Source: Iphione sp. A-MEVVRFRX5 (lineage: Eukaryota). From it: 64,000 bases of DNA. The notes below the pieces were generated by a model, which saw only the letters and a list, made by a program, of their open reading frames with translations, did no database searches and was not told the DNA's origin. The stretch lies in assembly GCA_976226885.1 (NCBI GenBank), contig OZ320315.1, positions 41,540,001 to 41,604,000 on the forward strand, in the 5' to 3' direction. Numbering within the stretch: position 1 is the stretch's first letter; every line of letters begins with the position of its first letter. Positions 4,067 to 59,573 of this stretch are shown in pieces. The position numbers and the translations under genes are program-made.

Positions 4067-4539
4067 CAGGCCCTTAGCCAAGGGGGTTTCATCCGATACC
4101 ACCCCCCCCCTCACAAGAGCCAGGAGTTCCACCTCTCTAGGCCTATAGCCAAGGGTGTATCATGAGAAAGANNNNNNNNNNNNNNNNNNNNNNNNNNNNN
4201 NNNNNNNNNNNNNNNNNNNNNNNNNNNNNNNNNNNNNNNNNNNNNNNNNNNNNNNNNNNNNNNNNNNNNNNNNNNNNNNNNNNNNNNNNNNNNNNNNNNN
4301 NNNNNNNNNNNNNNNNNNNNAGAGATATTGGGAATACAGTATAGAAGTGATTCTGAAGGTACTGAAAGTATGATTAATGCATTTGCATGCAAATGTACAT
4401 GGATTCACCAGCAGGTGAAATATTTTAAGGAGTGAGCAATCTCTAACCCATCTAACCAGGAGTTCCACCTCTCTAGCTAAGAGTTCCACCTCTCTAATCT
4501 GAGATTACCCCCCCCCAAGACTTCCTCGCTACGGGCCTG
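4067..4539. mobile_element. Non-autonomous TIR element (MITE), spans an assembly gap
   Basis: TIRs caggcccttagc (4067-4078) and gctacgggcctg (4528-4539), 11/12 match. Flanked by ATTTT on both sides (4062-4066, 4540-4544). Same TIR as 36236-36395. Confidence 0.55.
4172..4320. other. Assembly gap (N run)
   Basis: 149 consecutive N. Confidence 1.
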
Positions 4540-27169: not shown

Positions 27170-28156
27170 TTATGCATCTGTCAAGCTATGCGTAAGTAGG
27201 TTTGCCACCACACCACCCCTGTTCGTACGGACATAAGCATGATAGGCATTTGAAGACCAATTGCCGAAAGCTTGAATATGTCTCTCGTCACAACCTTGAT
27301 TATAGGCTACAGTAGCCCCTGTTCTTCTCAGACTGTGGAGAGAGTACATATGACATGGAAGGCCGAGGGCCCGTAATATGTCCTTAAGCGTTCTCCCTAG
27401 GGACTGCGCTGTCACGGGGCTGTTGTCCCGTGGATTGACCAGGACAGGCTGCTCTGGGTGGAACGTAGGGGAGACTTGAAGAAGTTCTCGGTAGGCGTTG
27501 ACCACACAGACATCAGGATCAGGAGCGGGCGGCAACACCACGGTGCGGACATCATCGAAGTGCTGCATTGTCTTGGCCCACCTCTGCCTGACGACGAGGG
27601 TGTTGCCTTGAATGCAGATATCGCTCCTAGTCAAGTGGCGCCGAGGATCGAACTCAGCCAGGGTCCTTGGTGCCAACTCCGACTGACGGAAGCCTGTATA
27701 AAGCAGAAACAAAACAGAAAAACGCCAAAACGGGGCCTCCGGGCGAGAGGCCCCCATGACAATGATCTGTCGAACCAGTGACAAATCCATGGGGAGTCTC
27801 CTATTAACTGAATGGTCTTTCATCCTCCTCAACGCCTGCAGCGCCAGGCCAACTTCTCTGGAGTCCAGTGCCGAGGTGTAGATCTGGTGATCCTTCAGAA
27901 ATTCACGCACGGCCGATACTGCATTCGCGACCGACGCCGGCGACCTCATATGAGACGACAGGTACCGGACGTACATGGTTGCATGCATAATCGTGGGAGA
28001 CAAGGGAGGAGCGCCACACCACCTGCAGAACGCCAAATACGTAGATGCAGCGCCCCGTCGATTAGCCAGCGTACCAGGAGCGCGAGCCGTTCGAACGAGG
28101 CTGATGGCGCCAGCCGCCAACTGCCGCAGTTCAGGATCTGGGAGGAAGCAGAGAGT
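27170..28156 (-). CDS. Ngaro tyrosine recombinase ORF3 (stop-to-stop frame; no early ATG)
   Basis: Catalytic R (TGFR), K (WAKT), HSLRR, W (GNW) and Y (HAYVR) are all intact. The track start at 28120 is TTG. The frame continues directly from the pol TGA at 28157-28159. Confidence 0.93.
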   Translation of the reverse strand, partial: TLCFLPDPELRQLAAGAISLVRTARAPGTLANRRGAASTYLAFCRWCGAPPLSPTIMHATMYVRYLSSHMRSPASVANAVSAVREFLKDHQIYTSALDSREVGLALQALRRMKDHSVNRRLPMDLSLVRQIIVMGASRPEAPFWRFSVLFLLYTGFRQSELAPRTLAEFDPRRHLTRSDICIQGNTLVVRQRWAKTMQHFDDVRTVVLPPAPDPDVCVVNAYRELLQVSPTFHPEQPVLVNPRDNSPVTAQSLGRTLKDILRALGLPCHMYSLHSLRRTGATVAYNQGCDERHIQAFGNWSSNAYHAYVRTNRGGVVANLLTHSLTDA

Positions 28157-30034
28157 TCAAATGTCAATAGGCCAGTCAAGTAGGGAGAGGTCTGGCGAGA
28201 CGGGCACCATGTCTCTTTCAGACATGAAGTCACGCGCAATGAACCTGTACTTGGCCGCTGTGTGCCATCGTGACAACGCGTCAGCGAAGTCCATCTGGCT
28301 ACCAGGTACATGCTGGAACTCAAGGCGGAAACCATTATTGGCCTGATGAAACCACAGTGTCCTGGCGCAGCTCATCAGGACGTCATCGCGTCCCCTACCT
28401 GAAACATACACCTGGACAGCTGGTAAATTGTCGCAACAAACTCTTACTACTTTTCCTGCATCATTACCGTCAGTCATGGCACAGACTGCCAACATTACAT
28501 TTGCCGCCTCAATCTGCGTAATACTCATGTGCTGCATGCCAACGGGGAGAGTCTCCGCATAGTACATGTGCCCATCAGATGCCCCTATGCCACTCAAACA
28601 TGCGTCCGCCACCAGGACCCGCGACACGTCATTGCTGCCAATGATTTGGGTACCATTCCACAAAGGGAGGAACTGAAGGAACCACCTAATGTCTTTCTTT
28701 GCTGCTGACCCCAGCCTCAAATGCCTACCCTTACCGGCTCGTAGAAGGGCTAGAAGTCTGCCAACGAAGAGACGTGCTGGCCCCACACAGCGCGCGACGT
28801 GCAGGAGTTTTCCTATAATGCTCTGTAGGGACTTCCTGGTGACCGTCCGCACATTCTTGAGTCGATCCAGATCCGTCAGGATTTCATTGACCTTCTGCAA
28901 TGGGACAGAAATTAACATGTCATCAGTATTGACGTCCACTCCAAGCCAGGTGACCACCTTCCCAGGCCCCTGGGTCTTATGAACCGCTTCCGGCAAACCC
29001 AGCTGGCCGAACAAGTCCCTGGTAATCATGAACGCTCGCCTTGCTTCTTGCTCACCCGAGGCAGCGACAATCAGATCGTCAAGATACATGAAAGCACACA
29101 CATCCCGACCAGCCAATATCCTCACTAGGGCATCCGCAACCCGCTGCATGTGGTTAGATGAGCATCGCGACCCGAAGGGGATGCTCACATCCACATAGAA
29201 ACGGTCCTCCCATTTGAATGACAGTAATGGCCAGTCCCCCGGACATGCCGGGAAGTTCTTATATGCCCGAGATATATCCATGGTAAACATGAATGTGTCA
29301 GTCCCGGACAACCTAATTTTTCCCAGGAGGGACTCGACAGTTGGCAGGGAGTGATCACGTGTGGTCCCAAGCACCGTATTTTTAGGAACATAAGCATTAA
29401 CTGAACACTCTGGTGGAAAAGACATATCCGTTATTACACGACGTTGATCAGTGTCTTTCTTCGGGCGCGTCATTAATGGAGAGACATGAATCCAACCATC
29501 AAATGGGGGCTGGTCAAATGGTCCCATCAATGCGCCAAGAGAAAGTTCAGTGGCAACATACTTACTCACGTGCTCCGGGTAACTCGTTGCAGACGGATGA
29601 TTTGTCAGCATTGCAGTATCTGTTTCTGGTCCCAAGTAACCAATAGGAAAACCAAACCGAAGCAGATCTATTAGCTGTGGGTCACCTGTGTCCTGCGCCA
29701 GATACCAAGACCATGCCTCAATATTTAGCCCAGATTGAAGTGGGCAACGAGCTGCTAGTAAATTCGGATAACCAGTGTTCTTAACTTTATCATAAATGGT
29801 CGCCAATGTACTGTCCATCACTGATACATTTGCCTGTGGCCATTTCAAACGACGATAGGCAGCCATCTTATGTACATCGCATATATAGGCAATGTCATTG
29901 TTATCATCTGTTTCACAGCATTTCTTGATTGCTTGAAAGTCAATTCTGACACAATTAGTGGAGCCATACTCACATTCGGTGTGCTGGTGAACCTTTCCTA
30001 TATGTGTACGAGAGGCCGAGTTCGTTTCGGCCAT
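28157..30034 (-). CDS. pol: Ngaro RT + RNase H ORF2 (625 aa; frame open upstream into gag)
   Basis: LNIEAW...LLRFGFPIGY, MDISRAYKNF, IPFGS and YLDD (RT); VADAC, ITQIEA, CCDN and HVPG...ADALSR (DIRS-type RNase H). No methyltransferase domain. Confidence 0.95.
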   Translation of the reverse strand: MAETNSASRTHIGKVHQHTECEYGSTNCVRIDFQAIKKCCETDDNNDIAYICDVHKMAAYRRLKWPQANVSVMDSTLATIYDKVKNTGYPNLLAARCPLQSGLNIEAWSWYLAQDTGDPQLIDLLRFGFPIGYLGPETDTAMLTNHPSATSYPEHVSKYVATELSLGALMGPFDQPPFDGWIHVSPLMTRPKKDTDQRRVITDMSFPPECSVNAYVPKNTVLGTTRDHSLPTVESLLGKIRLSGTDTFMFTMDISRAYKNFPACPGDWPLLSFKWEDRFYVDVSIPFGSRCSSNHMQRVADALVRILAGRDVCAFMYLDDLIVAASGEQEARRAFMITRDLFGQLGLPEAVHKTQGPGKVVTWLGVDVNTDDMLISVPLQKVNEILTDLDRLKNVRTVTRKSLQSIIGKLLHVARCVGPARLFVGRLLALLRAGKGRHLRLGSAAKKDIRWFLQFLPLWNGTQIIGSNDVSRVLVADACLSGIGASDGHMYYAETLPVGMQHMSITQIEAANVMLAVCAMTDGNDAGKVVRVCCDNLPAVQVYVSGRGRDDVLMSCARTLWFHQANNGFRLEFQHVPGSQMDFADALSRWHTAAKYRFIARDFMSERDMVPVSPDLSLLDWPIDI

Positions 30035-30049
30035 TTCTACTCGTTTTTT
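30014..30049 (-). promoter_or_regulatory. Putative -1 programmed ribosomal frameshift signal (A_AAA_AAC + hairpin)
   Basis: Heptamer 30049-30043 in the gag frame, two codons before TAG; GGCCGA/TCGGCC hairpin at 30032-30014; a -1 shift enters the pol frame. Confidence 0.55.
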
Positions 30050-31305
30050 GCCACGTTGCTGGAAGCAGGGCGTTGCACGGGCTGGCTGGATGGCTGGGCC
30101 TTGAAATTCTGCTGCTGGTTTGGCTGCTGACGTTGCTGGTTCGTATACCTAGCTTTCTTCGAACATGCGGCAGTCGTATGGGCATGCTTGGCCCCATTAG
30201 CTGCGAAACAAAAACCACAGGCATGCAACAGGATAAAGTGGCCCTCGCAATGAGACTCACCCTTCTCCGAACATGAGCCCATACTGTATCGCGGGCACAC
30301 AACCTCAAGGGCAGGGTCCGCAGGATCAGTGGGCGCCATGCTTATGCGCAGTCTCTCGTACCGTATGGCATCTTGGTCCCTCCATGTCAGGTCATTCCGT
30401 TCTATGCGGTCAAAAACCATATTTGACCACCTCCTAACGTTACGCCACGGTCGATGTTGGGCATCTTGCGCCACATGAAAGAGGTGGTCGAGAACGAATT
30501 CCTTATCATGGGGTAAAACAGCATGTCTATCCCTAAGCATGGTAAGGTAGGCAGCAATATATTCCTTATAGGTAATTTTTGACTTATATTCATTTCTTTC
30601 TTTAGCTGTCATGCTCTGCTCTCTCTCGACATACATATGAGGTCGGGGGATAATATTCCTAATCCGAAAATCAAAGTTACCTCGAGTGGACTCCAGCTGT
30701 GACATCCATGGAGCGGCTGCATCCAAGTATGCGTCCACGTACTGCTGGACGGCCGGTCCTTGTCTGAGCTGTGTTGGAGTCGGAAATGTCGGCATTGTCT
30801 GCTGAACAGGGTATGGCGGAGGCGGAGTGGCATAATGCTGGCTTTGCTGTATTGTCGACTGCACGTGGTATGACGGTAGTGACTGCACCGGCGGGGTAGT
30901 GTAGTTTTGAAGCTGTGTAGATGGTTGCGTAACAGCAGGTCCGCTGTAAGTGGCTGGGGGGTGTCCAAGCGCGCGCTGGCTGGGCACGACGGTGCTAGAA
31001 GTTGTCTGGACCGGTTGCCCACCACTCGTTGCCGGTACCTCGTGTATTTCGCCGGTAGACTGCTGGGTGGACTGGTTCTGAAATAAATTAGACAGGTCAG
31101 TTATTTGCGTTTTTAGTCCTGCCAATTCATTGACTGCACGTTCAAGTTGCTCAAGTCTGTCGGTGATTCTCGGTTTCTGGTTGGCGTCCTTCTTGTTTGG
31201 AGCAGGCGTCCGTGGTACTTCGGTCACGTCCTGGTCCGAGCTTTGTCCACTAGATTGGCCACCGGTTTGGCCATTCTCGGGATCGGGGTTCTTCTTGGGT
31301 CCCAT
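30037..31305 (-). CDS. gag: Ngaro Gag-like ORF1 (422 aa from ATG 31305)
   Basis: N-terminal coiled coil (RLEQLERAVNELAGLKTQITDL), Q/P/T-rich linker, and C-terminal C-x7-C...H / CxxC...H...C fingers (CPRYSMGSC...HACGFC...HTTAAC). The GTG start in the ORF track (31449) lies upstream of the predicted TSS. Confidence 0.85.
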   Translation of the reverse strand: MGPKKNPDPENGQTGGQSSGQSSDQDVTEVPRTPAPNKKDANQKPRITDRLEQLERAVNELAGLKTQITDLSNLFQNQSTQQSTGEIHEVPATSGGQPVQTTSSTVVPSQRALGHPPATYSGPAVTQPSTQLQNYTTPPVQSLPSYHVQSTIQQSQHYATPPPPYPVQQTMPTFPTPTQLRQGPAVQQYVDAYLDAAAPWMSQLESTRGNFDFRIRNIIPRPHMYVEREQSMTAKERNEYKSKITYKEYIAAYLTMLRDRHAVLPHDKEFVLDHLFHVAQDAQHRPWRNVRRWSNMVFDRIERNDLTWRDQDAIRYERLRISMAPTDPADPALEVVCPRYSMGSCSEKGESHCEGHFILLHACGFCFAANGAKHAHTTAACSKKARYTNQQRQQPNQQQNFKAQPSSQPVQRPASSNVAKNE

Positions 31306-31328
31306 GTCGTAGAGAGGACGTGCACCGA

Positions 31329-31449
31329 CAGCGATCCAGGACAGCGAGTGAGGCCGGCAGCTTTTGCGCAGCCTTATATAGTCCAGGAGTAGAATATTTT
31401 TAGCTCGAGCTGACGCAATGACTGGCCATGCAAGCCTACATGCCGACAC
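31329..31449 (-). repeat. Ngaro repeat A1 (5' terminal)
   Basis: 121-bp direct repeat of 26923-27043. Confidence 0.95.
31346..31380 (-). promoter_or_regulatory. Putative Pol II core promoter in repeat A (TATA box + initiator)
   Basis: Minus strand TATATAAG at 31380-31373 and Inr-like TCACTC whose A (31349) is 31 nt downstream. TGCGTCA CRE/AP1-like site further upstream. Duplicated in A2 (26974 / 26943). Confidence 0.6.
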
Positions 31450-46756: not shown

Positions 46757-48004
46757 TCAGTAGATGAACTCCACCGGCTTCTTGGTCGTCTTCTTGATCG
46801 ATGAGACGAGTCCGATGTGTCGCACCAGGTTCGGCTCTATAAGGTAGCGTTCGTAGTGGCGGGTGCGCGCGAAGGAGTCCATGGCGAAGTCGAGAGGGAA
46901 CGTGGCGGTGCAGGTGGTGTCGGCGAGGTAGGCCGCCAGTTCGCCGGCCATGGGGCGCGGGTAGAGGATGGCCGGGGAGCAGCAGTCGGGCGCCCCGACC
47001 ACCGAGTAGAGCGACGGCGAGACGCGACGCAGCTCGAGCAGGTACTGCCGCCCGAGCGAGGCGACCACCAGCGCGGTGAAGACACAGCCGGTCACGTAGT
47101 AGTAGGCTGGGTGGGTGGTGTGGCGCCGCTCCAGGAACCAGCACGTGTAGAGGAAGATGAGACCGCCGACCAGAGCATAGCCGAGCAGCTCGCTGAGGTG
47201 GCGCAGCTCGTTACTGAAGCCTTGCCAGCGCTCAGGGTAGTAGAGCTTGAGGTATGCCCAGGGCCGACTGTTGGGCACGTAGTCACCGGCACTGAAGCGG
47301 TGCTCCACCAGGTGGTTCAACACGTGATGCAGGACGGTAAAGAGCTCTGGACGCGGCACGGCATCGTCCTCGATGATCAGCACGTACCGCGGACGGTACG
47401 ACAGCGCGCGCCGCATACAGAACATATAGTCTGCTTTCTCTTTATTGAACGTGTCTTTCTCGACGTGATCTGCACCTGCCTCGAAGCGCCGATAGCGGGG
47501 TATGTACTTGGCTAATTCGTCTGCTTCGGTGTGGGCCTTGGGCTCGGCGTCGCAGAGGAAGAGCACCTTATTGCCGAAAACTCTGTCGGCGTCGAAGACC
47601 TGCATGATCCTGGCCACCACCTGAGTGAGGTAGCCGATGGCCTTCCCCTCCTGGTTCCTGTTGACTGTGACGATGCCGATGGCAACGGACACGTTCCCGT
47701 TCGTCTCCATGTTGGTAAAATGGCGGAGGACGGCGTCTGCTTTCAGACCGGCCAGGTACTGTTTCGACAGGGCGACTCGCGCTACGTTCATGGAGGAGGC
47801 CCTCTGCATGTACTGATCGTCCGATTTGAGCGATATGTAGTGGTACTTCGAATAGGCCCAGTCCCTGCACGTTAAGGGCATGAGCACGCCGAAGGTACCC
47901 AAGAAGAGCACCGATATAAAGAAAGCTACCTTGGGGTTGTGACGCCTCCATAACCGAAGACATGAAAAACACCGGTAAATGTATCCATGGAGACACATCT
48001 TCAT
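46757..48004 (-). CDS. PGAP4: PGAP4/TMEM246 GPI-anchor GalNAc transferase, single coding exon (415 aa from ATG 48004)
   Basis: Matches remembered human PGAP4 motifs: FNKEKADYMFC, YVLIIEDDAVP, YLKLYYPERWQ, LGRQYLLELRRVSPSLYSVV..CC.PA.L.P and EPNLVRHIGLVSS. N-terminal TM plus two internal TM segments. The track start at 48019 is TTG. Confidence 0.93.
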   Translation of the reverse strand: MKMCLHGYIYRCFSCLRLWRRHNPKVAFFISVLFLGTFGVLMPLTCRDWAYSKYHYISLKSDDQYMQRASSMNVARVALSKQYLAGLKADAVLRHFTNMETNGNVSVAIGIVTVNRNQEGKAIGYLTQVVARIMQVFDADRVFGNKVLFLCDAEPKAHTEADELAKYIPRYRRFEAGADHVEKDTFNKEKADYMFCMRRALSYRPRYVLIIEDDAVPRPELFTVLHHVLNHLVEHRFSAGDYVPNSRPWAYLKLYYPERWQGFSNELRHLSELLGYALVGGLIFLYTCWFLERRHTTHPAYYYVTGCVFTALVVASLGRQYLLELRRVSPSLYSVVGAPDCCSPAILYPRPMAGELAAYLADTTCTATFPLDFAMDSFARTRHYERYLIEPNLVRHIGLVSSIKKTTKKPVEFIY

Positions 48005-49754
48005 TTTGAAGTGTGTCAAGAAACACTGGAATCACGCAAGCACTTTCTGACAGGAGCTGAGATTCAAGGCTTCACGTACAATCTCTCCAAGTAAGATGAC
48101 ACGTAATTCGGATATCACCCCGTGAAGTGCAACGAATAAAGTGTTGACTGGAAGAAGTGATGCGAATTCGAAGCGGCTTCCATGTGATAAATCATCTTCA
48201 CATACAGTTTCCTTTATTCACCATTAAAGAAGACATAAATTTGCGTATACCTTATACTTTGCACGGCGCCATCTTCTTACTTTGGTAACGAGCCAGTGAT
48301 GATTAAGAAAAGGAAACAGTCAATTACGAAAGCAACGTCAATGCGTCGGCAACATTTTCCGTTGTACAGGTGAAACGTTATAACGTGGATGACATGCCGC
48401 TATCTACCGCAATCACATACGACGGATTCGAAAGGTTTAAACTGTATCCATGGCCCGTTGCCGCAACCTTGAAGAGTGCTGGAAAGATGAACAACAAAAG
48501 AGTTACACATTAAATCAGACGAAAGTTACTTGTTCTCGGAATGACACTGTTTTATACTACACGTAATGACGATTATCTACAGGTAAATCCGTATGACTGG
48601 CAATCCAATGCAAAATGACAGAAAAGCCCACAGGTCCGCTTGATATACCCCTAAGGTTAAATATAGCAGCGGCTATATACAGTACCGATTAGTGCGGCCA
48701 CACCCATACCACGCCCGTTCCAACAAAACGCTGTATATTTTTCAAAGGGCAAGTCATGCACCATGTCATATGACAAAAACGAATCTGTATTAGTCAAATG
48801 TACGCGTTTTAACGAAAACATATCAGGAGAAACAGAGGACCATAACATAGCAGGAGAAACAGAGAACCAAAACATATCAGGAGAAAAAGAGGACCAATTT
48901 TGCATAAATATAATATGGTACCTTAATTTAATGTTCTAACACAGTTGGCTCAGTCCGATATTCATGAACAATATTATTTCCATTCAACTCTTTCATTTTA
49001 GTTCACGAAGCAATTTGTTCACTACTTCTGAACTGGATCTCACACTGCCGACATATTTATATATACCTAATTGACTTATATTTTAGGTTATGGTTGTATA
49101 TCTCCAAAACATTATTCTAATAGCATGAATCACAAGCACACGGTAAAAAGTATGCACATCGCTTTTTACAGAAAGTTGTGATTTCTATAGAGAAAGAAAA
49201 CCGAACAAATTTTTGTCCTAGTCAACAGAGCTAACAAATGTTTCTGACGTGAATAAATCAACTTTATTTTTTTGTGTTTGTTCCATGATTGTAACCACAA
49301 AAGTCAAAAGCCGACAATAAGTATAGAGCTGATGTGGTTCATTCATTAATGTGGACGAAATGCATATAGGAACAGCGCAAACTGGACCACTCGTCCAACA
49401 AAAATGCATTTAGACATTAAATAGCTTTTAATCAAGAAAGGGACGTCATGCAGTACAGGAAAAGGTTTGGTAAATTATGGAAATCAATGCTGGTCAGTTA
49501 TTTCTTTTTTTGCTTTCTTCCTGTTTTTTTTCGCAATATCCATCACCTTGTGGTAGTAGCCCAGTCAAATTTAAGAAATTATTGCATGATACACAAACTG
49601 AATACATGAGATGTGAATCCTACGAGCAGCAATGGGCAGTTGCGCAATGCACGTGTATGCATATACATGTATATGTGTATGTTTGGGGGGGGGTAGCTTC
49701 ATTTAATTGGGGGTAAATTGTCTCAAATCCATTTAATAATTTTTTTTCCATTTT

Positions 49755-52129: not shown

Positions 52130-52290
52130 GGAGTAAGGTGTCGATGCGAAGCTATTGCGTGTTGTTTATATGAAAACACCTAGAGGAGTCAATAATTGTG
52201 GGGTTATGATGGAGTAAGGTGTTGATGCGAAGCTATTGAGTGTTGTTTATATGGAAACACCTGGAGGAGTCAATAATTGTGGGGTTATGA
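52130..52290. repeat. 81-bp tandem duplication
   Basis: ggagtaaggtgt.gatgcgaagctattg...caataattgtggggttatga at 52130 and 52211. Confidence 0.85.
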
Positions 52291-53588
52291 CCCAGATGCC
52301 AAGGTTAATTGAAAAATTGACCCAGCAGTGATCCAAGTCAGAGAGTAAAGGTTAAATTGCAACCTCAGGTTGTGACCTCTTGTTATATAATGACCATGTT
52401 TGTTTGTACTTTTTAGATTGCTCCTTTGACTGTACTGGTATGCTTACTTAGCAATAAAGGATCAACTAAACTGCATCCCAAGTCCTGAGTTGTATTGTGT
52501 TACAATTTATCAATTAGAATTGTTACATTGTTCATGGTAGCATCACACACAGCAGGTGCGTTTGCCACATTTTGATGGTAATGTTAGTTCAGGTTTAGCA
52601 TTGTAAATCTATATTTCATGTTTATTCCTACATGCTGGTGGTAGCCACCTTTGGTGGTGGTTCTGGGATTGCTCCCAAATTAATATGCATGTAATGGGAG
52701 GTAACTACATTACACATAGTAAGAATACACAATACTTGCAACCTGACAATTTGTGACCGGTCATTTGAACCCCCATAGTCTGTACATTGAAAGTACAGCT
52801 AAGCACCTGGCGTGGATATAGCAGACTTATACTTGTCTTCCCATTGATGATAGAGTACTTCAAATGACAAAATCATACCTTAAAGAATTATATTACAGAT
52901 AGATACAAAAATACACACATTGTAGCTCTGGGAGACTCATGGCCAGAGTATCAATATTAGAACTATGAGAATTGTGACCAAAAAACTTGAGAGAGCTGGG
53001 GCACAAGAGCGAGGGTAGGCCAGAAATTAGGGCCAAATTCCTGAGTACAGATTGTTGTGGGTGCAAGTGACCTGACTTCCATAGAAATACATCATACTGC
53101 TTAGAGATTGGCGTATAATGATGTCTCCCACACCCTGTGTGATAGAAAATTATATTCATGTACATATATACATGTGCCAGTATATATGTTAGTTGCCAAG
53201 TCTAAATTTAAGGACTTTATGAATCGTGCTACATCATTGGTGAATTTGTCATTGGTTCCATGATTCATGAATGCTTGATCAAACTCTCAATAAGCCAGGA
53301 ATTCAGGGAGGGTCGCTTTGCTAGACAAGCACTAAAGAGGTTGTGTATGTGAGTACAACAGCACTAATTTACCAGTTTGACTAGACTTACCTGGGTAAGT
53401 TGACGGTAAACTGGAGTTAGTCCCGCTGTAGGAACGGAGTGGGGAGCAAGGGAGATATGATCGCTGCCACCTGGTGGACGACAGTATTGAAAGTGAGCGG
53501 CAAGAGCTGCCCTGTGTCGAAAAATACTGTAACGAGTGGGGAAGCTTCTTGCAGCAGATGCGAATCCGGGAGGGAGAGTCAGGGAGGG

Positions 53589-53713
53589 CCCTTGCTCCCC
53601 ACTCCGTTCCTACAGCGGGACTAACTCCAGTTTACCGTCAACTTACCCAGGTAAGTCTAGTCAAACTGGTAAATTAGTTCCGCTGGTCGTCACTACGTGG
53701 TGACCAAGGGAGA
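53589..53713 (-). repeat. DIRS internal complementary region (ICR)
   Basis: 53589-53678 is the reverse complement of 53363-53452; 53674-53713 is the reverse complement of 58133-58172; 5-nt overlap ttagt. Confidence 0.95.
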
Positions 53714-53906
53714 CTTGAAAGGTAAAGAATAAGACACTGGGCAGTATTGCAGAAAAAAGGCAGAATACTTTAATTCTGAATGAACACAGAAGCATGCAAA
53801 GGTTTTCAAAACGAGGGGTCTTTGACCCAGTGAACCAGTTTGAACGTAACAAAAAGAACCAGAGAGGACCCCTGTGGGGTCGTGTTGCTGCCTAGAGAGC
53901 TAGGAG

Positions 53907-54995
53907 TTACTTATGCGGAGTAATGTCTCTGCGGTAGTGTTTGAAGAAACTAGAGTCTGACCGCCACATCCCTTTGTTAAGGATTTCCTGCAAGGGCAGG
54001 CCTTGTGCGTAGAGTTTTGACGCGGACGCGCCTCTCGTGCTGTGCGCTGTGTAGACCGTCGTGTCCACCCCTGCTTTGGCCATGACTTCTTTGGCCCAAC
54101 GGCTAATGGACGTTTGTCCTACCGCTTGATGGGGCGGAATAACGCTGATAAACAGTCTACTGTTAGAGTCCGCTAAGTCTTTCGTGCGGTGAAAATATTC
54201 CTTGAGACAATGGACTACACACACTGCTGGGTCAGAGGTACAGGGGGTCAGTTTGACCTGATCAGGCCGTCTACCTGGTGCTGAGTGCTTAAGAACCGAC
54301 CCGTACAAAATAGTGACCGAACCGTCAGAGGAGAAATGAACGTTACATCTTACAATCTTATACAGTGTTTGGGTCCTCCCACAGGAGGCGAGAAGTAACA
54401 ACATGCTGGTTTTTAAGGACAACTCTTTTAGACTAAGGCTACTGTTTGGTGTCCAACTGCGTAAGAAACTGAGTACCAATTCTACGTCCCAAGTGTCTGT
54501 ATACCGGGCTCGGGGCGGTCGAACGTTAAAGATCCCTCTTAGTACACGGGAGGTAACGTACTGTTGTCCGAAAGGAACCCCATTAAGCTTAGGGAGAATG
54601 ACCGACAAGGCCGAACGCGCTGAATTAATGGTGTTATACCTAGCTCCTTGTTCAAATAACTGTACTAGAAACAACAGTCCTTGTTGTGTGGAAGCTCTAG
54701 TAGGGTGGAAGTTCTTTTCCATGCAAAAGGTTCGCCATCGGCGCAGGTAAGATCGATATAGCTGTCGAGTCTTTGGCCGCCATGAGCGGATGATGTGTTT
54801 TCCAATCTTGGGGTGTGGTGTCAGTTCACGTACTGTTTGTAGCATAAGCGGACAGCAACTAGCTTGATACTGGCGATATGTGGCTGGGAGCCCTGGAGGG
54901 GCCCCTGTAGGTTGTCCGGCTGGCTGTAGAACTTGAGTGGAGCCCGTGTGGAGGCCTCCATCAGCAGGGGGAACCACCATTGCGCTGGCCACCAT
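53907..54995 (-). CDS. DIRS tyrosine recombinase (probable start ATG 54845, 312 aa)
   Basis: SWRPKTRQLYRSYLRRWRTFC N-terminal helix; catalytic R (SCGR), K (LKHS), HSTR, W (GMW) and Y (KHY). Overlaps the end of pol in another frame. Confidence 0.95.
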   Translation of the reverse strand: MVASAMVVPPADGGLHTGSTQVLQPAGQPTGAPPGLPATYRQYQASCCPLMLQTVRELTPHPKIGKHIIRSWRPKTRQLYRSYLRRWRTFCMEKNFHPTRASTQQGLLFLVQLFEQGARYNTINSARSALSVILPKLNGVPFGQQYVTSRVLRGIFNVRPPRARYTDTWDVELVLSFLRSWTPNSSLSLKELSLKTSMLLLLASCGRTQTLYKIVRCNVHFSSDGSVTILYGSVLKHSAPGRRPDQVKLTPCTSDPAVCVVHCLKEYFHRTKDLADSNSRLFISVIPPHQAVGQTSISRWAKEVMAKAGVDTTVYTAHSTRGASASKLYAQGLPLQEILNKGMWRSDSSFFKHYRRDITPHK

Positions 54996-56788
54996 GGAGC
55001 CACCAGGATGACGTCGGCGTTGTCGGCTTGGGCCTTCCGGAGCGTCCGTCCCACCAGACTGAAAGGAGGGAAGGCATATGCGAGATCAAACTGTCCCCAA
55101 TGGAGTGTGAACGCATTGATAAAATAAGCTTCAGGGTCGGCTTTCCAGCTGACATAAGTGGGGACTTTGTGATTAACCCGGGATGCAAATAAGTCTACGT
55201 CGGGGGAGCCCCACTGTCGGACAATGCGGTCAAACAATTTATGGTTCAATTCCCATTCTATCTCAAGATTGAAGGATCTCGACTCAGTGTCCGCTATGAC
55301 GTTGGCGGACCCTGGGATGTGGGTTGCTTGTAGCACTAAGTTTCTTGCCTCCGCAAATTCCCAGATGGCTAGTGCTACCAGGTTACATTTTCCTGCTCGT
55401 GTCCCCCCCATGTTGTTAATGTAGCTTACTGTTGTTGTGTTGTCCGATAACAGTAGCACGTGTGCATCACGGGTGTTCTGGCAGTAAGTCCTTAAGCCAA
55501 AGAGAGCTGCCATCAGTTCGAGCACATTGATGTGCAGACCCCTTTCACTAGAGGACCATAGGCCTCCTGTGCTATGTCCGGAGTGGCTTGCGCCCCATCC
55601 CATGAGGGATGCGTCTGTTGTGAGTCGTAGTGTGGGAGACGAGAGTGTAAAGGTTTTCTGGATGGTGGGTATATTGGATATCCACCATTGTAACTCCTCT
55701 CTGCATCTATGTGTCAAGGAGAAGTTGCCCCGGAATTCCAGCCTCCCCGCTCGGCGAAGGCATTTTATTTTTCGCCTCTCTAAGTGTTTTAAGTGTGCCG
55801 GCCCATAATATGTTGCTTTAGTCAAGTCGTTTAAGGTCCCGATAACTGAGGCGGCTGTCCGTATGGAGCATGTGTTGTCCGTCAGCAGGCGTGTAACCTT
55901 TTGGGTTGAGCGAGTGATTTTATCACGTGTGGGTGTGATTGTTTCGGTTGTGGAGTCGATGTTGTAGCCCAAGAAGGTGATTTGTTGTTGAGGTTGCAGG
56001 TTTGACTTTTCCAGATTTGTTACGAACCCTAGTGTGGTGAGGGTTTGCATCACGGCTTGTGTGTGTTGTTCCGCCATTGCTGGCGTGTGGCTGATGATCA
56101 ACAGGTCATCGAGATATGCGATTAACCGTATCCCTTGTTCCCTGCAGTAGGCTAGTACGGGTCTGAGGACTTTGGTGAAGATTCTCGGGGCTGAACTAAG
56201 TCCGAATGGTAGCACATTAAATTTGTACACCTGGTCCTGCCATTGGAAAGCTAGATAGTCGCGGAACTCTGGTTCGATATTTACTGAGTGGTATGCGTCT
56301 TTTAGATCTAAAGATGTCAGGTAGGCATTAGGGTGTATCGCTAGTATTGCCGACTGAAAAGATTCCATTTTGAAATGATGTTTGACCAGGAATACATTGA
56401 GCTGAGAGAGGTCAATAATGAGTCTAAAGGTGCCGTTTGGTTTCGGTCGGAGGAAGATGTTGGATATGAACCGCGCCGATTGAGGGTGAATTTTGGCAAT
56501 TACCCCCGAGTTGAGCATCTTTCGTATAGCCTCACTTGCTGCTTGAGTTTGTTCATGGTTAAACAGGTACTGTCGAGGGATGGTCCCTTGAAAGGGCGTT
56601 TCTAAAAATTCTAATCTGACCCCTTGTACTAAGCTTAACATATCCTGGTCTGACGTGACATTTTCCCATTGCGGTACAAAGTCAGCAATCGTAATTTTAT
56701 ACGGAGCAGAAAAAGAGTGACTCACCCTTACTGGCCTTTGGGCTGGGGTTTCTGCTGCTGCCCCAGCCCCTTCCCGTTTCCCGGGCGG
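54821..56788 (-). CDS. pol: DIRS pol: RT + RNase H + Dam-like methyltransferase domain (open frame; no upstream ATG)
   Basis: LDLKDAY, LPFGLSSAP and YLDD (RT); TDAS, HINVLEL, SDN and HIPG..N..AD..SR (RH); DLFAS...AFPPF..V.RTL.K...LVAPWWP.Q.WFP (MT). The track start at 56725 is GTG, and the frame is open back to 56788. Confidence 0.95.
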   Translation of the reverse strand, partial: PPGKREGAGAAAETPAQRPVRVSHSFSAPYKITIADFVPQWENVTSDQDMLSLVQGVRLEFLETPFQGTIPRQYLFNHEQTQAASEAIRKMLNSGVIAKIHPQSARFISNIFLRPKPNGTFRLIIDLSQLNVFLVKHHFKMESFQSAILAIHPNAYLTSLDLKDAYHSVNIEPEFRDYLAFQWQDQVYKFNVLPFGLSSAPRIFTKVLRPVLAYCREQGIRLIAYLDDLLIISHTPAMAEQHTQAVMQTLTTLGFVTNLEKSNLQPQQQITFLGYNIDSTTETITPTRDKITRSTQKVTRLLTDNTCSIRTAASVIGTLNDLTKATYYGPAHLKHLERRKIKCLRRAGRLEFRGNFSLTHRCREELQWWISNIPTIQKTFTLSSPTLRLTTDASLMGWGASHSGHSTGGLWSSSERGLHINVLELMAALFGLRTYCQNTRDAHVLLLSDNTTTVSYINNMGGTRAGKCNLVALAIWEFAEARNLVLQATHIPGSANVIADTESRSFNLEIEWELNHKLFDRIVRQWGSPDVDLFASRVNHKVPTYVSWKADPEAYFINAFTLHWGQFDLAYAFPPFSLVGRTLRKAQADNADVILVAPWWPAQWWFPLLMEASTRAPLKFYSQPDNLQGPLQGSQPHIASIKLVAVRLCYKQYVN
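56705..56782 (-). promoter_or_regulatory. Putative -1 programmed ribosomal frameshift signal (G_GGA_AAC + pseudoknot)
   Basis: Heptamer 56782-56776 in the gag frame, 6-nt spacer, 9-bp stem 1 and 8-bp stem 2; a -1 shift enters the pol frame. Confidence 0.75.
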
Positions 56789-57873
56789 TTACTGTCGGAG
56801 TTCTCGAGCGGGCTCCTGTAGTTGTTCCCCTTATAGTCCGTTCTCTTCTTGTACCTGTTCTGAGTCTGGTTGCCTTGTTGACCATTGGCGGGCTTGTTCT
56901 TCGGGTACGGCTCGGACCGGTTTGCGAAGTTCCCGTTCTTGGGCTTGAACTTTCCTCCCACTTTTCCGCGGTCAAACTTTTTCGAGAACTTTTCATCGTC
57001 CTCCAGATCTTTGCATTTCTGGCGGAAGTCGTTTCCAAACAGAAGCTCCGACGACGGGGATGCTTCGTCTACCAGTTTTTTGTACGTATCCGGTAGTCCC
57101 ATCTTTACCTCGTGGCGTCTAATTTTGAGGAGGTCGTCCCTGTTGCTAGCTTGCATGTTCACCGTGTCTGTGATAATTTTAAGTGCGTCTCTAACCCACG
57201 GTTGTTCTCTTTCCTTCTTGATGAGGGTTTCTGAGAGCCTCGCTAGGCCGGTGAAAATGGTGTTCGCGCTATACATCTGTTTCTGGAGGGCCTTGTCACG
57301 ATTGCGTCCCACCGGATGCATGTGTAGCCACAACGCTGAATTAAGTTTCGGAACCTTCAACTGATCGATGTTTCCGGGTCTGGCGTATTTTTCGCGAAGG
57401 GCCTTAATGGTTTCCGTGTCTAGTGGAGTTTTCACCCTGCCTCCGAAGTATTTGGCGACTCTGTCATGCGTGTCCGCGGATACGGTTTTGTCACGATCGA
57501 TATTTTTAGCCAATTCTTCGAAATATGCTCCTTCGTCGTCATCTGGTGCTTCCGACAGTGTGGGCATATCTGCATCCTCGGGTAGGGATCCTAACAGTCC
57601 ATCGGTTGATAAGGTTGAGATGTTTGAAATCTGGTCCCCGAGCATCCGTTCAATGGAGGGCGCGAAGCTGCTTCGTGGGCTGGCGGCGCGACTCGCTCGT
57701 TCCACCGCCGTCATTCTGGCACCCAGGGAATGGATAGCTGACAGGACTTGGGTGAGAGTGTCGTCTTTCTCAGGTTGGTTTCTCGGTCTGAGGGCCGGAG
57801 GTCTGTTTTGAGGAACGACACCCTCGTCAGCCCCGCTAGAAGATGAGCTAGCTCTGTCGAGGTCTTCCGCCAT
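56728..57873 (-). CDS. gag: DIRS Gag-like ORF1 (381 aa)
   Basis: YARPGNIDQLKVPKLNSALW and SELLFGND motifs typical of animal DIRS1 ORF1; basic N/K/Q-rich tail; sits just inside the 5' ITR. Confidence 0.85.
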   Translation of the reverse strand: MAEDLDRASSSSSGADEGVVPQNRPPALRPRNQPEKDDTLTQVLSAIHSLGARMTAVERASRAASPRSSFAPSIERMLGDQISNISTLSTDGLLGSLPEDADMPTLSEAPDDDEGAYFEELAKNIDRDKTVSADTHDRVAKYFGGRVKTPLDTETIKALREKYARPGNIDQLKVPKLNSALWLHMHPVGRNRDKALQKQMYSANTIFTGLARLSETLIKKEREQPWVRDALKIITDTVNMQASNRDDLLKIRRHEVKMGLPDTYKKLVDEASPSSELLFGNDFRQKCKDLEDDEKFSKKFDRGKVGGKFKPKNGNFANRSEPYPKNKPANGQQGNQTQNRYKKRTDYKGNNYRSPLENSDSNRPGNGKGLGQQQKPQPKGQ

Positions 57874-59414
57874 GCTCGCAAAATGGCCGGTCTGGACCGC
57901 GTGTAGTTACAAAAAAGAAGGGGGGAAACGAGACCAAGACGGGTCGACCCCTTTCTAATTTGCGGTCAAATGGGAAAACAAAAGTCCCAAGCACTACTAG
58001 ATGTCAACCAAATCTGAAGTTAGCTGAAAAAGACGTCGATGGAGTTCGATAAAAAATCCTGACGTAGGTAACCGTCTGTCCACCTAGGAATCCAGGACTT
58101 TCACTGTCGTCCACCAGGTGGCAGCGATCATATCTCCCTTGGTCACCACGTAGTGACGACCAGCGGAACTAACTACCCTGACCGTTTGATACAAAAATGG
58201 ATAACACTCAAGTTGAAGTGGCATCAAGACTCAACTTAAGGAGTGGAACTTGTATTTTTAAAAAAGCAGAACTTTGATAATAAAGAAGAAAAGTGGGGGG
58301 AAGAGTTGTGACAAAATAAGTCTTCATCACACACACATAACACAACACAATAGGTCACAAGCACAAGCACGAACGACAGAGTGCAAACCTATGACCTAAT
58401 GCTTGAACTTTAAGTAACATCTCATTCAGGCACTGAGATAAGGACACAATAAGTTATTTTTTCCATGCCTGTGCACATATTATACCACCTGTTGCTGGGA
58501 TGTTTGTATCATGAGTTGGTATACACTTTCAGTTCAGAACGCAAACATACAAAATGGCAGGTGTCCATTCAATGTTTCAACACAGAAATATAATAAATGT
58601 AAAAAGACCATTTCCTGTCAAAGACAGAATAGGATGCTTTAATTCAATACATAAACACTCTGCAGACGTATACTGAATCTATTTTAATACATATTAATCT
58701 TAAAATAAAAACCATTTTTTAAATACGTCATCTCCCAAACCAGAAGTCAAAAGATTTTATGCTCAGTATGCATGCTCAACTTTGCAACTTCCGGACTAAC
58801 AGTGGGACTCCGGGGGACCAAATAACACTTCACCAAGAAGTAAAACCATCCATAATGCTTAAATAAAGTCCAGATAATGGTTCACCAACAGTTTTTTTCT
58901 TTGGTAGCGCTTCACCAGTAATGACAGGGGGTGTCGGCTATTCTGGTGAAGCGTTATTGGCTCTTCCTATTCACCACGAAGTGTTATTTTCCCTCCTAAA
59001 TGAGCCCGAAACATTATCCAGCATCTAATGGTGAAGCGCTAACCAAGAAATAATTCTTGGTGAAGTGTTATCTGCTTGGTATTTTAGCACTATGAGTGGT
59101 CTGAATTCTTGGTGATGCATTAGGTTGTGTTCACATGCATCCTGACAACAAATCGGCCGTGTGTGTGGACACAGAGGAACCCCCTGCAGAGTTTGTTAGT
59201 TAATTGCCTCCATATGGTCTACAGCTGTCCCTTAACCATTGCTTCTATGGAACTTCCCATACGTGTCCATGCCAATCCCATCCTTGACGGGATGGGATTT
59301 TGACACCCGCATCCATGTGTGGATGTGTATAAGGCCTGGTTTCCTTGTGTATGTTTTTTTTTCTGTACTGTGTGCCTGTGTGGAAAACCAGTCGCTTTTC
59401 CGGACCTGCATGGA

Positions 59415-59573
59415 NNNNNNNNNNNNNNNNNNNNNNNNNNNNNNNNNNNNNNNNNNNNNNNNNNNNNNNNNNNNNNNNNNNNNNNNNNNNNNNNNNNNNN
59501 NNNNNNNNNNNNNNNNNNNNNNNNNNNNNNNNNNNNNNNNNNNNNNNNNNNNNNNNNNNNNNNNNNNNNNNNN
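59415..59573. other. Assembly gap (N run)
   Basis: 159 consecutive N. Confidence 1.

What the first reader, a model, noticed from the sequence alone, without database searches (positions are those of the whole stretch)
56705..56788. Textbook -1 ribosomal frameshift cassette (G_GGA_AAC + H-type pseudoknot) linking gag to pol in a DIRS1-type retrotransposon
Seen: the minus strand reads AAC CGC CCG GGA AAC GGG AAG GGG CTG GGG CAG CAG CAG AAA CCC CAG CCC AAA GGC CAG TAA GGGTGAGTCACTCTTTTTCTGCT. G_GGA_AAC (56782-56776) is an X_XXY_YYZ heptamer in the gag frame. After a 6-nt spacer, GGGCUGGGG (56769-61) pairs with CCCCAGCCC (56748-40) to give 9 bp. Loop bases AGCAGAAA (56756-49) pair with UUUCUGCU (56712-05) to give 8 bp, with loops of 4, 0 and 27 nt. 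The pol frame is open only from 56788, six nt before the heptamer, and has no ATG before the conserved FVPQW..VTSD motif (first Met is about 28 codons after 56725). Established: heptamer, 5-9 nt spacer and pseudoknot is the retroviral/coronaviral -1 PRF architecture, and G_GGA_AAC is used by SRV-1 gag-pro and PEG10. Inference: pol is made as a ~1017-aa Gag-RT-RH-MT fusion. I do not know of a characterised frameshift pseudoknot in DIRS elements, but I could not check the literature.
Basis: partly seen in the sequence, partly recalled or inferred. Interest (0 to 1): 0.82.

Follow-up and report, generated by a model that had tools for sequence, protein, structure and literature searches.

The report
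DIRS retrotransposon gag-pol frameshift signal
An apparently intact DIRS-type jumping gene carries a real, well-placed ribosome-slippage signal that lets its reverse-transcriptase gene be read as an extension of its first gene; this is ordinary for retroviruses but is shown here to be general for this little-studied group, which also carries an unexpected conserved splice-site-like pair.

Summary
On the minus strand, G_GGA_AAC (56782-56776) lies in the ORF1 (gag) frame, 6 nt after the pol frame opens. A 6-nt spacer and a perfect 9-bp stem follow.

Pol is in the -1 frame. It has no ATG before residues that are invariant in relatives. No acceptor exists that could splice an initiator in.

Among 41 distinct related DIRS junctions with pol in -1, 35 carry a canonical in-phase heptamer. 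That is a 6.6-fold, phase-specific enrichment. Stems after the heptamers are stronger than at control positions. Rfam's only match in the element is a sub-threshold hit to the Ma3 gene frameshift signal, starting exactly at the heptamer.

So -1 programmed frameshifting giving a Gag-Pol fusion is well supported (about 0.85). The pseudoknot's second stem is only marginally better than chance and is unproven.

It pairs in phase with an acceptor-like site at the start of the recombinase frame. The same holds in an unrelated Ngaro-like element in this window. This suggests a pol-removing intron, but no transcript evidence was found.

Verdict: a new member of a known kind; moderate interest.

The parts
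53356..58174 (-). DIRS1-like retrotransposon, one apparently intact copy of about 4.8 kb. All three reading frames are open with no breaks.
   Evidence: Inverted termini and an internal complementary region bound it. Three ORFs carry RT, Dam-like and tyrosine-recombinase hits. It is the only copy in the window.
58097..58174 (-). Left (5') inverted terminal repeat.
   Evidence: It is inverted relative to 53415-53494 at 84% identity. Its outer 40-45 nt are complementary to 53674-53718 at 96-100%.
56728..57873 (-). ORF1 (gag-like), 381 aa, stop TAA at 56730-56728.
   Evidence: ORF listed. It is homologous to the upstream ORFs of DIRS relatives: phmmer E down to 8e-34, with 53 of 57 below 1e-5. 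No Pfam or PDB match, alone or as a profile. 'Gag' is therefore by position and family convention.
56776..56782 (-). Slippery heptamer G_GGA_AAC in the ORF1 frame. A second, weaker overlapping heptamer, C_CCG_GGA, lies at 56785-56779.
   Evidence: G_GGA_AAC is listed among the most shift-prone heptamers on mammalian ribosomes in PMC5009743. Its codons align with the shift-site codons of the nearest relatives.
56770..56775 (-). 6-nt spacer.
56740..56769 (-). Stem 1 hairpin: arms 56769-56761 and 56748-56740 (9 bp) with a 12-nt loop at 56760-56749.
   Evidence: Duplex energy -20 kcal/mol. It forms in the MFE and the centroid. Its hairpin score of -18.8 is the strongest of 36 related junctions and beats all 15 controls. 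It aligns to the stem of Rfam RF01093.
56705..56712 (-). Candidate 3' arm of stem 2, pairing with loop bases 56756-56749. Unproven.
   Evidence: Its significance is marginal. It lies downstream of the donor-like motif, so inside the candidate intron.
54821..56788 (-). Pol reading frame (-1 relative to ORF1), 655 codons open. RVT_1 lies at about 55958-56446 and the Dam-like methyltransferase at about 54968-55255. There is no ATG before the conserved W41/T45/D47.
   Evidence: The best relatives are 47% identical.
56720..56728 (-). 5' splice-site-like motif AGG|GTGAGT. The G of GT is at 56725, and exon 1 would end on a pol-frame codon boundary.
   Evidence: It is a conserved nucleotide-level motif at this position in relatives. 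A match of 7/9 or better occurs in 90% of 41 junctions against 15% of controls (p 1e-21). It is phase-locked in 34 of 37.
55059..55080 (-). 3' splice-site-like motif: a pyrimidine tract ending CAG, with G at 55059. Exon 2 would start at 55058 on a YR-frame codon boundary.
   Evidence: It has the best pyrimidine tract of 167 AG sites downstream of the donor. The same site is found in relatives. It is confounded by the pol-frame methyltransferase motif F-P-P-F-S.
53907..54995 (-). Tyrosine-recombinase ORF, 362 aa from its ATG. The frame is open from 55085. It is -1 relative to pol and overlaps the end of pol.
53589..53718 (-). Internal complementary region.
   Evidence: 53674-53713 is the reverse complement of 58133-58172 (100%). 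53589-53678 is the reverse complement of 53363-53452 (100%).
53356..53494 (-). Right (3') inverted terminal repeat with its extension.

Best explanation
The site is a -1 programmed ribosomal frameshift signal.

**Mechanism (inferred).** Ribosomes translating ORF1 (gag-like) of the full-length DIRS transcript mostly stop at the TAA at 56730-56728 and make Gag alone. A minority pause with GGA and AAC in the P and A sites, because the 9-bp G+C-rich stem 6 nt downstream resists unwinding. Both tRNAs slip back one base to GGG and AAA. Reading then continues in the pol frame to 54824. This gives a Gag-RT-RNaseH-methyltransferase fusion of about 1017 residues.

**Shown:** the anatomy, the phase, the absence of any other entry into pol, and the family-wide conservation of the arrangement.

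**Inferred:** that slippage occurs, and its efficiency.

**Stimulator.** It is at least a stem-loop. Whether the loop also pairs with 56712-56705 to form an H-type pseudoknot is open; I put it at roughly 0.35.
For: **1. Anatomy**. The heptamer is in the ORF1 phase, 6 nt inside the 60-nt overlap. A 6-nt spacer and a perfect 9-bp stem follow.

**2. No other entry into pol.**
- The first pol-frame Met is residue 50. W41, T45 and D47 are conserved in 28, 27 and 28 of 28 relatives.
- No AG lies between 56720 and 56651.

**3. Family survey.**
- Pol is -1 to ORF1 in 58 loci, +1 in one and in frame after a stop in one.
- After de-duplication, 35 of 41 junctions have a canonical in-phase heptamer.
- The in-phase rate is 3.4% per codon in the overlap against 0.53% in the rest of ORF1 (odds ratio 6.6, Fisher 7e-21).
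- 53 of 84 zone heptamers are in phase (binomial 2e-8).
- 26 of 41 junctions have no pol-frame ATG before the conserved W.

**4. Downstream stems.**
- Mean energy is -10.1 against -5.3 kcal/mol at control positions (Mann-Whitney 1.4e-7).
- 12 of 36 junctions beat all 15 controls. The window's stem is the strongest.
- Two alignable sub-groups keep the stem, each with two compensatory pairs.

**5. Positional homology.** The shift-site codons align with those of the nearest relatives (G_GGU_UUU, G_GGA_UUU, G_GAU_UUU). Each of these is followed by its own stem.

**6. Rfam.** The only match at E<=1 in the 5.6-kb element is RF01093, the Ma3 gene frameshift signal.
- It spans the full model at 56782-56722.
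- It scores 29.4 bits, E 0.04 (0.002 on 301 nt).
- The heptamer is identical. The stem is nearly identical, and its one differing pair is changed on both sides.

**7. Heptamer quality.** G_GGA_AAC is among the most shift-prone heptamers (PMC5009743).

**8. Rank within the window.** Third of 680 heptamers by downstream hairpin.
Against: - There is no expression, ribosome or protein data. Frameshifting itself is inferred.
- Only one copy of this family was available, and the nearest relative is 47% identical in pol. Neither the heptamer nor the stems could be tested for conservation or covariation within the family.
- The 81-nt region does not fold better than shuffles (z -0.96), because the sequence is G+C-rich.
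- The Rfam hit is below the gathering score. At whole-window scale it would not be significant.
- Six of 41 related junctions lack a canonical heptamer. These include the clade nearest the window.
- Four loci have a pol-frame ATG overlapping the ORF1 stop, so other entry routes exist in some relatives.
Confidence: 0.85

Rival explanations
1. Pol is translated on its own by termination-reinitiation or non-AUG initiation next to the ORF1 stop, for instance at the GTG at 56725, which lies 3 nt after the TAA. The heptamer and stem would then be incidental.
For: - Gene callers place starts at this position in many relatives, giving the 'MS..' column.
- Four related loci have a pol-frame ATG that overlaps the ORF1 stop by one base.
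- 15 of 41 junctions have some pol-frame ATG before the conserved W.
Against: - The window has no ATG there.
- The 'MS' starts are GTG or TTG calls made under the bacterial code.
- Reinitiation would not require a fixed -1 frame, yet 58 of 60 loci have it.
- It does not explain the 6.6-fold, phase-specific heptamer enrichment or the stems at a 4-10 nt spacing.
- The loci with an overlapping ATG also carry an upstream U_UUU_UUA.
Confidence: 0.07
2. Splicing from the GTAAGG or GTGAGT donors joins ORF1, or an upstream AUG, to pol. Pol would then be made from a spliced mRNA without frameshifting.
For: - Donor-like GT motifs lie at 56731 and 56725.
- The second is a conserved element in the family.
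Against: - No AG dinucleotide exists between 56720 and 56651.
- For these donors the only frame-restoring acceptors are at 56634 and 56616. They lack pyrimidine tracts and would delete the W..T.D residues conserved in 27-28 of 28 relatives.
- The donor lies after the ORF1 stop.
Confidence: 0.03
3. The copy is a silent relic. The arrangement is inherited but nothing is translated, so the cassette has no present function in this genome.
For: No expression data are available. Most transposon copies in genomes are silenced.
Against: - All three frames are open with no breaks.
- The internal complementary region is 100% identical to both termini over 40 and 90 nt. This points to a recent insertion.
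- Even if this copy is silent, the signal would still be the family's expression device.
Confidence: 0.05

Closest known systems
Ma3 (PNMA3) gene -1 frameshift signal, Rfam RF01093 (RF_site5)
   Same: The heptamer is identical and the spacer similar. The stem is nearly identical: one pair differs and is changed on both sides. The full-length model matches, starting at the heptamer. The review PMC5009743 describes Ma3 as about 20% efficient -1 frameshifting at a classical heptamer stimulated by an H-type pseudoknot.
   Different: The score of 29.4 bits is below the gathering score of 35. The host here is an intact DIRS element with RT, methyltransferase and recombinase, not a domesticated Ty3/gypsy-derived gag gene. 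The downstream tail that would hold the second stem is not alike. Convergence on a G-rich stem after this heptamer is as likely as shared descent.
gag-pol -1 frameshift signals of retroviruses and LTR retrotransposons
   Same: Pol is in -1, with a short overlap, an X_XXY_YYZ heptamer, a 5-9 nt spacer and a 3' stem or pseudoknot. The outcome is a Gag: Gag-Pol ratio set by translation. A 2003 survey found pol in -1 in 28 of 51 animal LTR retroelements (PMC5009743).
   Different: The DIRS order lacks protease and DDE integrase and uses a tyrosine recombinase. I found no description of recoding signals for it in the held literature.
Subgenomic splicing in retroviruses and in copia (from my own knowledge, not from a tool). 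This comparison applies only to the candidate intron.
   Same: A donor near the end of gag and an acceptor before a downstream gene would remove pol from part of the transcripts.
   Different: No transcript evidence exists here. The acceptor overlaps a conserved coding motif. In fused gag-pol relatives the phases do not all fit.

Membership tests
Canonical eukaryotic -1 programmed frameshift cassette | X_XXY_YYZ heptamer phased in the upstream (0) frame | tested here: met
   G_GGA_AAC at 56782-56776 is in the ORF1 frame.
Canonical eukaryotic -1 programmed frameshift cassette | Downstream ORF in the -1 frame, open from before the site, with no initiator of its own | tested here: met
   The pol frame opens at 56788. 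The first Met is residue 50, after conserved residues 41-47.
Canonical eukaryotic -1 programmed frameshift cassette | Stable RNA structure starting 5-9 nt after the heptamer | tested here: met
   A 6-nt spacer is followed by a 9-bp perfect stem of -20 kcal/mol. It ranks third of 680 heptamers in the window and is the strongest of 36 related junctions.
Canonical eukaryotic -1 programmed frameshift cassette | H-type pseudoknot (loop of stem 1 paired with downstream sequence) | tested here: inconclusive
   The 8-bp complement gives P 0.005 (Watson-Crick only) to 0.058 (with G-U), and P 0.03 by energy. Two of 139 natural segments match as well. It is not a family-wide feature. No pseudoknot-aware folding tool was on hand.
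Canonical eukaryotic -1 programmed frameshift cassette | Measured frameshifting, or a detected transframe product | not testable with these tools
   No expression, ribosome or protein data are available.
DIRS1-like retrotransposons (DIRS order) | Pol with RT/RNase H plus a methyltransferase domain | tested here: met
   RVT_1 at 1e-27. Dam-like at 0.004, below the Pfam cut-off. Relatives carry RNase H and Dam hits.
DIRS1-like retrotransposons (DIRS order) | Tyrosine recombinase ORF overlapping the end of pol | tested here: met
   Phage_integrase and SAM-like N-terminal hits are just below the cut-offs. There are 31 homologues with E down to 3e-81. The overlap is 262 nt.
DIRS1-like retrotransposons (DIRS order) | Inverted terminal repeats plus an internal complementary region matching both termini | tested here: met
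DIRS1-like retrotransposons (DIRS order) | ORF1 homologous to ORF1 of other members | tested here: met
   phmmer E 8e-34 to 1e-5 against 53 of 57 upstream ORFs. A capsid fold could not be tested: there is no PDB or Pfam match, and the model has pLDDT 41.
Rfam RF01093 (Ma3 gene frameshift signal) | Score at or above the family's gathering score | tested here: not met
   29.4 bits against 35.
Spliceosomal GT-AG intron (candidate, 56725-55059) | Donor matching the 5' splice-site pattern and conserved beyond coding needs | tested here: met
   The window scores 8/9. A score of 7/9 or better occurs in 90% of 41 junctions against 15% of controls. Flanking codons are hypervariable, while the xAG, GTx and xGT positions are kept.
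Spliceosomal GT-AG intron (candidate, 56725-55059) | Acceptor (pyrimidine tract plus AG) conserved beyond coding needs | tested here: inconclusive
   It ranks first of about 120-200 AG sites in 27 of 36 loci and is in phase in 30. In 22 of 30, however, the tract encodes F-P-P-F and the Pro third positions are free. The AG-holding codon is never TCN. Eight loci use other sites.
Spliceosomal GT-AG intron (candidate, 56725-55059) | Spliced transcripts or processed copies | tested here: not met
   Nine YR-anchored contigs all have pol upstream. There is no gag-next-to-YR arrangement in 95 loci. The sample is biased towards pol-bearing DNA, so this negative is weak.

The most novel reading that the evidence does not exclude
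Tyrosine-recombinase retroelements of this kind carry a conserved intron that removes nearly all of pol.

**In the window's DIRS element.**
- The donor lies 3 nt after the ORF1 stop, on a pol-frame codon boundary.
- The acceptor lies at the opening of the recombinase frame, on a recombinase-frame codon boundary.
- The same -1 frameshift signal would therefore feed two products: Gag-Pol from unspliced RNA and a Gag-recombinase fusion from spliced RNA.
- This would explain two long-noted features: the 'long ORF overlap' of pol and YR, and the lack of a usable YR start codon in many elements.

**Support.**
- The donor motif is conserved at nucleotide level.
- An in-phase acceptor is present in 30 of 36 loci.
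- The YR frame opens 0-12 codons before the site in 24 of 30 loci.
- The first YR-frame ATG lies more than 90 codons downstream in 12 of 30 loci.
- The pol/YR overlap shows no slippery-site enrichment.
- The Ngaro-like element in this window has the same layout, and there the acceptor lies in non-coding sequence.

**Against.**
- The acceptor overlaps a conserved coding motif.
- The phases do not fit in 4-5 of 8 fused gag-pol relatives.
- No spliced contig or processed copy was found.
Probability: 0.3. Interest if true: 0.8.

Novelty: new member of a known kind. Interest (0 to 1): 0.5.

Why it matters
How DIRS-order elements express pol and the recombinase from overlapping frames has been left open in the papers I could read. 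They describe ORF overlaps but no recoding signal. This window gives a clean example, and the survey done here shows that a retrovirus-style -1 frameshift cassette is the rule in this clade.

That matters for three reasons:
- Annotation: pol should be modelled as a Gag fusion rather than given a bacterial-style GTG or TTG start.
- Evolution: it bears on how the Gag : Pol ratio is set across retroelements.
- Method: it provides a new, natural set of heptamer-plus-stem variants.

If the candidate intron is real, it would add a retrovirus-like subgenomic mRNA to a group thought to lack one. It would also tie two products to one frameshift site.

Tried and rejected
**Searches that gave nothing useful**
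- The word search with ORF1 gave no hits in its length band. Homology was then shown locally against the upstream ORFs of fetched loci.
- No closer relatives than 47% pol identity exist in the collections. Within-family covariation of the window's stems was therefore impossible.

**Alignments and folds that failed**
- Mixed-family consensus folds gave no consensus structure. The stems lie in different registers. Only small alignable sub-groups worked.
- MAFFT misaligned the 3' arms of the nearest clade. Those sequences were folded singly instead.
- The pseudoknot is not supported as a family feature.

**Hypotheses tested and not supported**
- A second -1 frameshift from pol into the recombinase frame: the overlap shows no in-phase heptamer enrichment, and the window has none.
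- A short intron just after the donor: it is excluded because there is no AG, and the apparent ..GCAG|GT.. in relatives encodes conserved Ala-Gly.

**The hunt for spliced transcripts**
- It used the last word search and nine look-ups. Only pol-bearing contigs were found.

**ORF1 structure**
- The single-sequence model was too poor to use (pLDDT 41). No fold search was run on it.
It was not sent.

- The exon-joined model and any string joined across the frameshift were deliberately not built. Exon 2 was searched on its own by reference.

**Disclosure and compliance**
- Disclosure: the 9-nt splice-donor pattern used as a yardstick in my scripts came from general knowledge, not from a tool.
- Nothing in the window was taken for human.
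- The N runs (4172-4320 and 59415-59573) were left alone.
Full report
**1. The observation**

- GGGAAAC lies at 56782-56776 and is phased G_GGA_AAC in ORF1.
- A 6-nt spacer follows.
- Stem 1 is a perfect 9-bp stem, 56769-61 with 56748-40, with a duplex energy of -20 kcal/mol.
- A further 8-nt complement links loop bases 56756-49 with 56712-05.

ORF1 runs 57873-56728 and is 381 aa long. The pol frame is open from 56788 to 54821 and is -1 relative to ORF1. The first pol-frame Met is residue 50, at 56641.

**2. What the element is**

- The pol frame has RVT_1 (1e-27) and a weak Dam-like methyltransferase hit.
- The third ORF (54995-53907) has weak Phage_integrase and SAM-like hits.
- Inverted termini (58174-58097 and 53494-53356) and an internal complementary region (53718-53589) bound a 4.8-kb element. 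The complementary region is 100% identical to both termini over 40 and 90 nt.
- This is the DIRS1-like architecture described in PMC3266345.
- All three frames are open with no breaks. The copy looks young.
- ORF1 has no Pfam or PDB match, alone or as a profile.
- ORF1 is nevertheless clearly homologous to the upstream ORFs of DIRS relatives.
- A single-sequence structure model was too poor to use.

**3. Can pol be reached any other way?**

No.
- In an alignment with 28 relatives, W41, T45 and D47 of the pol frame are conserved in 28, 27 and 28 sequences. All lie before the window's first Met.
- There is no AG between 56720 and 56651.
- For the two donor-like motifs, the only frame-restoring acceptors would delete those conserved residues.

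**4. Is the cassette more than chance?**

- Of 680 XXX(AAA/TTT)N heptamers in the window, on both strands and in any phase, this one has the third-best hairpin at a 4-10 nt spacing. The two above it are a single T-run site.
- It lies in phase within a 60-nt overlap.
- The 55 nt that hold stem 1 fold with z -2.1.
- The 81-nt stretch including the proposed stem 2 gives only z -0.96.

**5. The family survey**

Pol relatives are at most 47% identical, so the test is at family level. I fetched 95 loci.

*Frame arrangement*
- Among loci with an upstream ORF of at least 150 codons, pol is -1 in 58, +1 in one and in frame after a stop in one.
- About eight further loci have one fused gag-pol frame.

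*Heptamers, after de-duplication (41 distinct -1 junctions)*
- 35 carry a canonical in-phase heptamer, mostly U_UUU_UUA (15) and A_AAA_AAC (13).
- The in-phase rate is 3.4% per codon in the overlaps against 0.53% in the rest of ORF1 (odds ratio 6.6, Fisher 7e-21).
- 53 of 84 zone heptamers are in phase (binomial 2e-8).
- 26 of 41 junctions have no pol-frame ATG before the conserved W.

*Stems after the heptamers*
- They are stronger than at 15 control positions per locus: mean -10.1 against -5.3 kcal/mol, Mann-Whitney 1.4e-7.
- 12 of 36 junctions beat all controls. The window's stem is the strongest.
- Two sub-groups that align without gaps keep the stem, each with two compensatory pairs.

*The clade nearest the window*
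- It lacks a canonical heptamer. All four copies share G_GAU_UUU at the homologous position, where the A-site codon can re-pair perfectly in -1.
- Each is followed by its own stem.
- In a Gag C-terminus alignment, the shift-site codons of the window and of six relatives fall in the same columns.

**6. Likeness to known signals**

- Rfam's only match at E<=1 in the 5.6-kb element, on both strands, is RF01093, the Ma3 gene frameshift signal.
- The match spans the full model at 56782-56722. It scores 29.4 bits against a gathering score of 35. E is 0.04, or 0.002 when only 301 nt are searched.
- The heptamer is the same. The stem is nearly the same, and its one differing pair is changed on both sides.
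- At gathering thresholds the whole window has no Rfam hit.
- PMC5009743 lists G_GGA_AAC among the most shift-prone heptamers. It describes Ma3 as about 20% efficient frameshifting with an H-type pseudoknot.
- This is a likeness, not membership.

**7. The pseudoknot**

- Stem 2 is marginal. An 8-bp Watson-Crick match to the 12-nt loop arises in 0.5% of shuffles of the next 70 nt, or 5.8% if G-U pairs are allowed. Duplex energy gives P 0.03. Two of 139 natural segments of the element do as well.
- Among 20 relatives with strong stems, only three reach P<0.05.
- I therefore treat the stimulator as a stem-loop that may be a pseudoknot.

**8. An unexpected conserved element**

*The donor*
- In the 110 nt before the conserved W codon, a match of 8/9 or better to the splice-donor pattern occurs in 56% of 41 junctions against 2.7% of control windows. 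A match of 7/9 or better occurs in 90% against 15% (p 1e-21).
- It lies mostly 5-35 nt after the ORF1 stop. Its GT falls on pol codon positions 1-2 in 34 of 37.
- The flanking codons are hypervariable. The motif codons keep their nucleotides while the residues change: Q/K/E/R before it, and S/G/R/C/N after the Val.

*The acceptor*
- In the window, the best acceptor-like site downstream, of 167 AG sites, has its G at 55059. It lies 26 nt inside the opening of the recombinase frame and on a recombinase-frame codon boundary.
- The equivalent site ranks first in 27 of 36 relatives and is in phase in 30. The implied introns are 1.65-1.85 kb.

*Caveat*
- In 22 of 30 loci the tract encodes the methyltransferase motif F-P-P-F followed by S or R. 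The Pro third positions use all four bases.
- The AG-holding codon, however, is never TCN, and eight loci use other pyrimidine-rich in-phase sites.

*Further points in favour*
- The recombinase frame opens 0-12 codons before the site in 24 of 30 loci.
- Its first ATG lies more than 90 codons downstream in 12 of 30.
- The pol/recombinase overlap has no slippery-site enrichment.
- The unrelated Ngaro-like element at 27170-31449 in this window repeats the layout:
  - an in-phase A_AAA_AAC heptamer (30049-30043) followed by a hairpin;
  - a donor-like motif 66 nt after its ORF1 stop;
  - a joint-top acceptor in the non-coding gap before its recombinase ATG, in a compatible phase.

*Points against*
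- Phases do not fit in four or five of eight fused gag-pol relatives.
- All nine recombinase-anchored contigs have pol upstream.
- No processed copy occurs in 95 loci.

*Status*
- I did not build the exon-joined model. Exon 2 was searched on its own.
- If the intron is real, the 3' arm of stem 2 lies inside it. Only stem 1 would then be common to both RNAs.

**9. Literature**

- No held paper describes recoding or splicing in DIRS or Ngaro elements.
- The founding subscription papers are not held, so priority cannot be settled here.

**10. Verdict**

- The site is a real -1 frameshift cassette of the classical kind, in an intact DIRS1-like element (confidence 0.85).
- The pseudoknot is unproven.
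- This is a new member of a known kind.
- The candidate intron is the most novel reading left open (probability about 0.3).

Noticed in passing
window 56720-56728 and 55059-55080 (-); relatives L001-L083: A splice-donor-like motif just after the ORF1 stop is conserved at nucleotide level. A phase-matched acceptor-like site lies at the opening of the recombinase frame. Together they suggest an intron of about 1.67 kb that removes pol. No transcript evidence was found.
   Followed up: partly
window 27170-31449 (-): A second, unrelated tyrosine-recombinase retroelement of Ngaro type: RT and recombinase, no methyltransferase hit, 22% pol identity. Its ORFs are 470, 625 and 316 aa. ORF2 is -1 of ORF1, with an in-phase A_AAA_AAC at 30049-30043 followed by a 6-bp hairpin. 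It also has a donor-like motif (G at 29973) and a top-ranked acceptor (G at 28138) in the non-coding gap before the recombinase ATG.
   Followed up: partly
L001, L093, L094, L095 (one assembly, ERZ25767047): The clade nearest the window has no canonical heptamer. It shares G_GAU_UUU at the homologous Gag position, where only the A-site tRNA can re-pair perfectly. A copy-specific stem follows, and its loop holds the ORF1 stop and the donor-like motif.
   Followed up: partly
L010, L018, L028, L060, L061, L070, L074, L079: Relatives in which the pol frame stays open more than 1.2 kb upstream of the conserved W, apparently as a single fused gag-pol frame. Five of the eight still carry the donor-like motif at 8/9, four of those five in a different codon phase.
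   Followed up: partly
L009, L016, L043, L052: A pol-frame ATG overlaps the ORF1 stop by one base, giving a stop/start overlap. These loci also have a slippery heptamer upstream, so a reinitiation route may coexist with frameshifting in some families.
   Followed up: no
window 53589-53718 versus 58133-58172 and 53363-53452: The internal complementary region is 100% identical to both termini, and all three frames are open. This DIRS copy looks like a recent insertion.
   Followed up: partly
window 46757-48019 (-): An ORF of 420 aa with a TTG start and no Pfam match. Its nature is unknown.
   Followed up: no
window 58830-59130 and 58892 (+): Just outside the element's 5' end there is an imperfect inverted repeat (about 90 nt, 77%) and a T-run followed by the strongest hairpin in the window. 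Both lie next to the N run at 59415-59573.
   Followed up: no
window 52130-52290 (+): Two adjacent 80-nt direct repeats, 95% identical, lie downstream of the element's 3' end.
   Followed up: no
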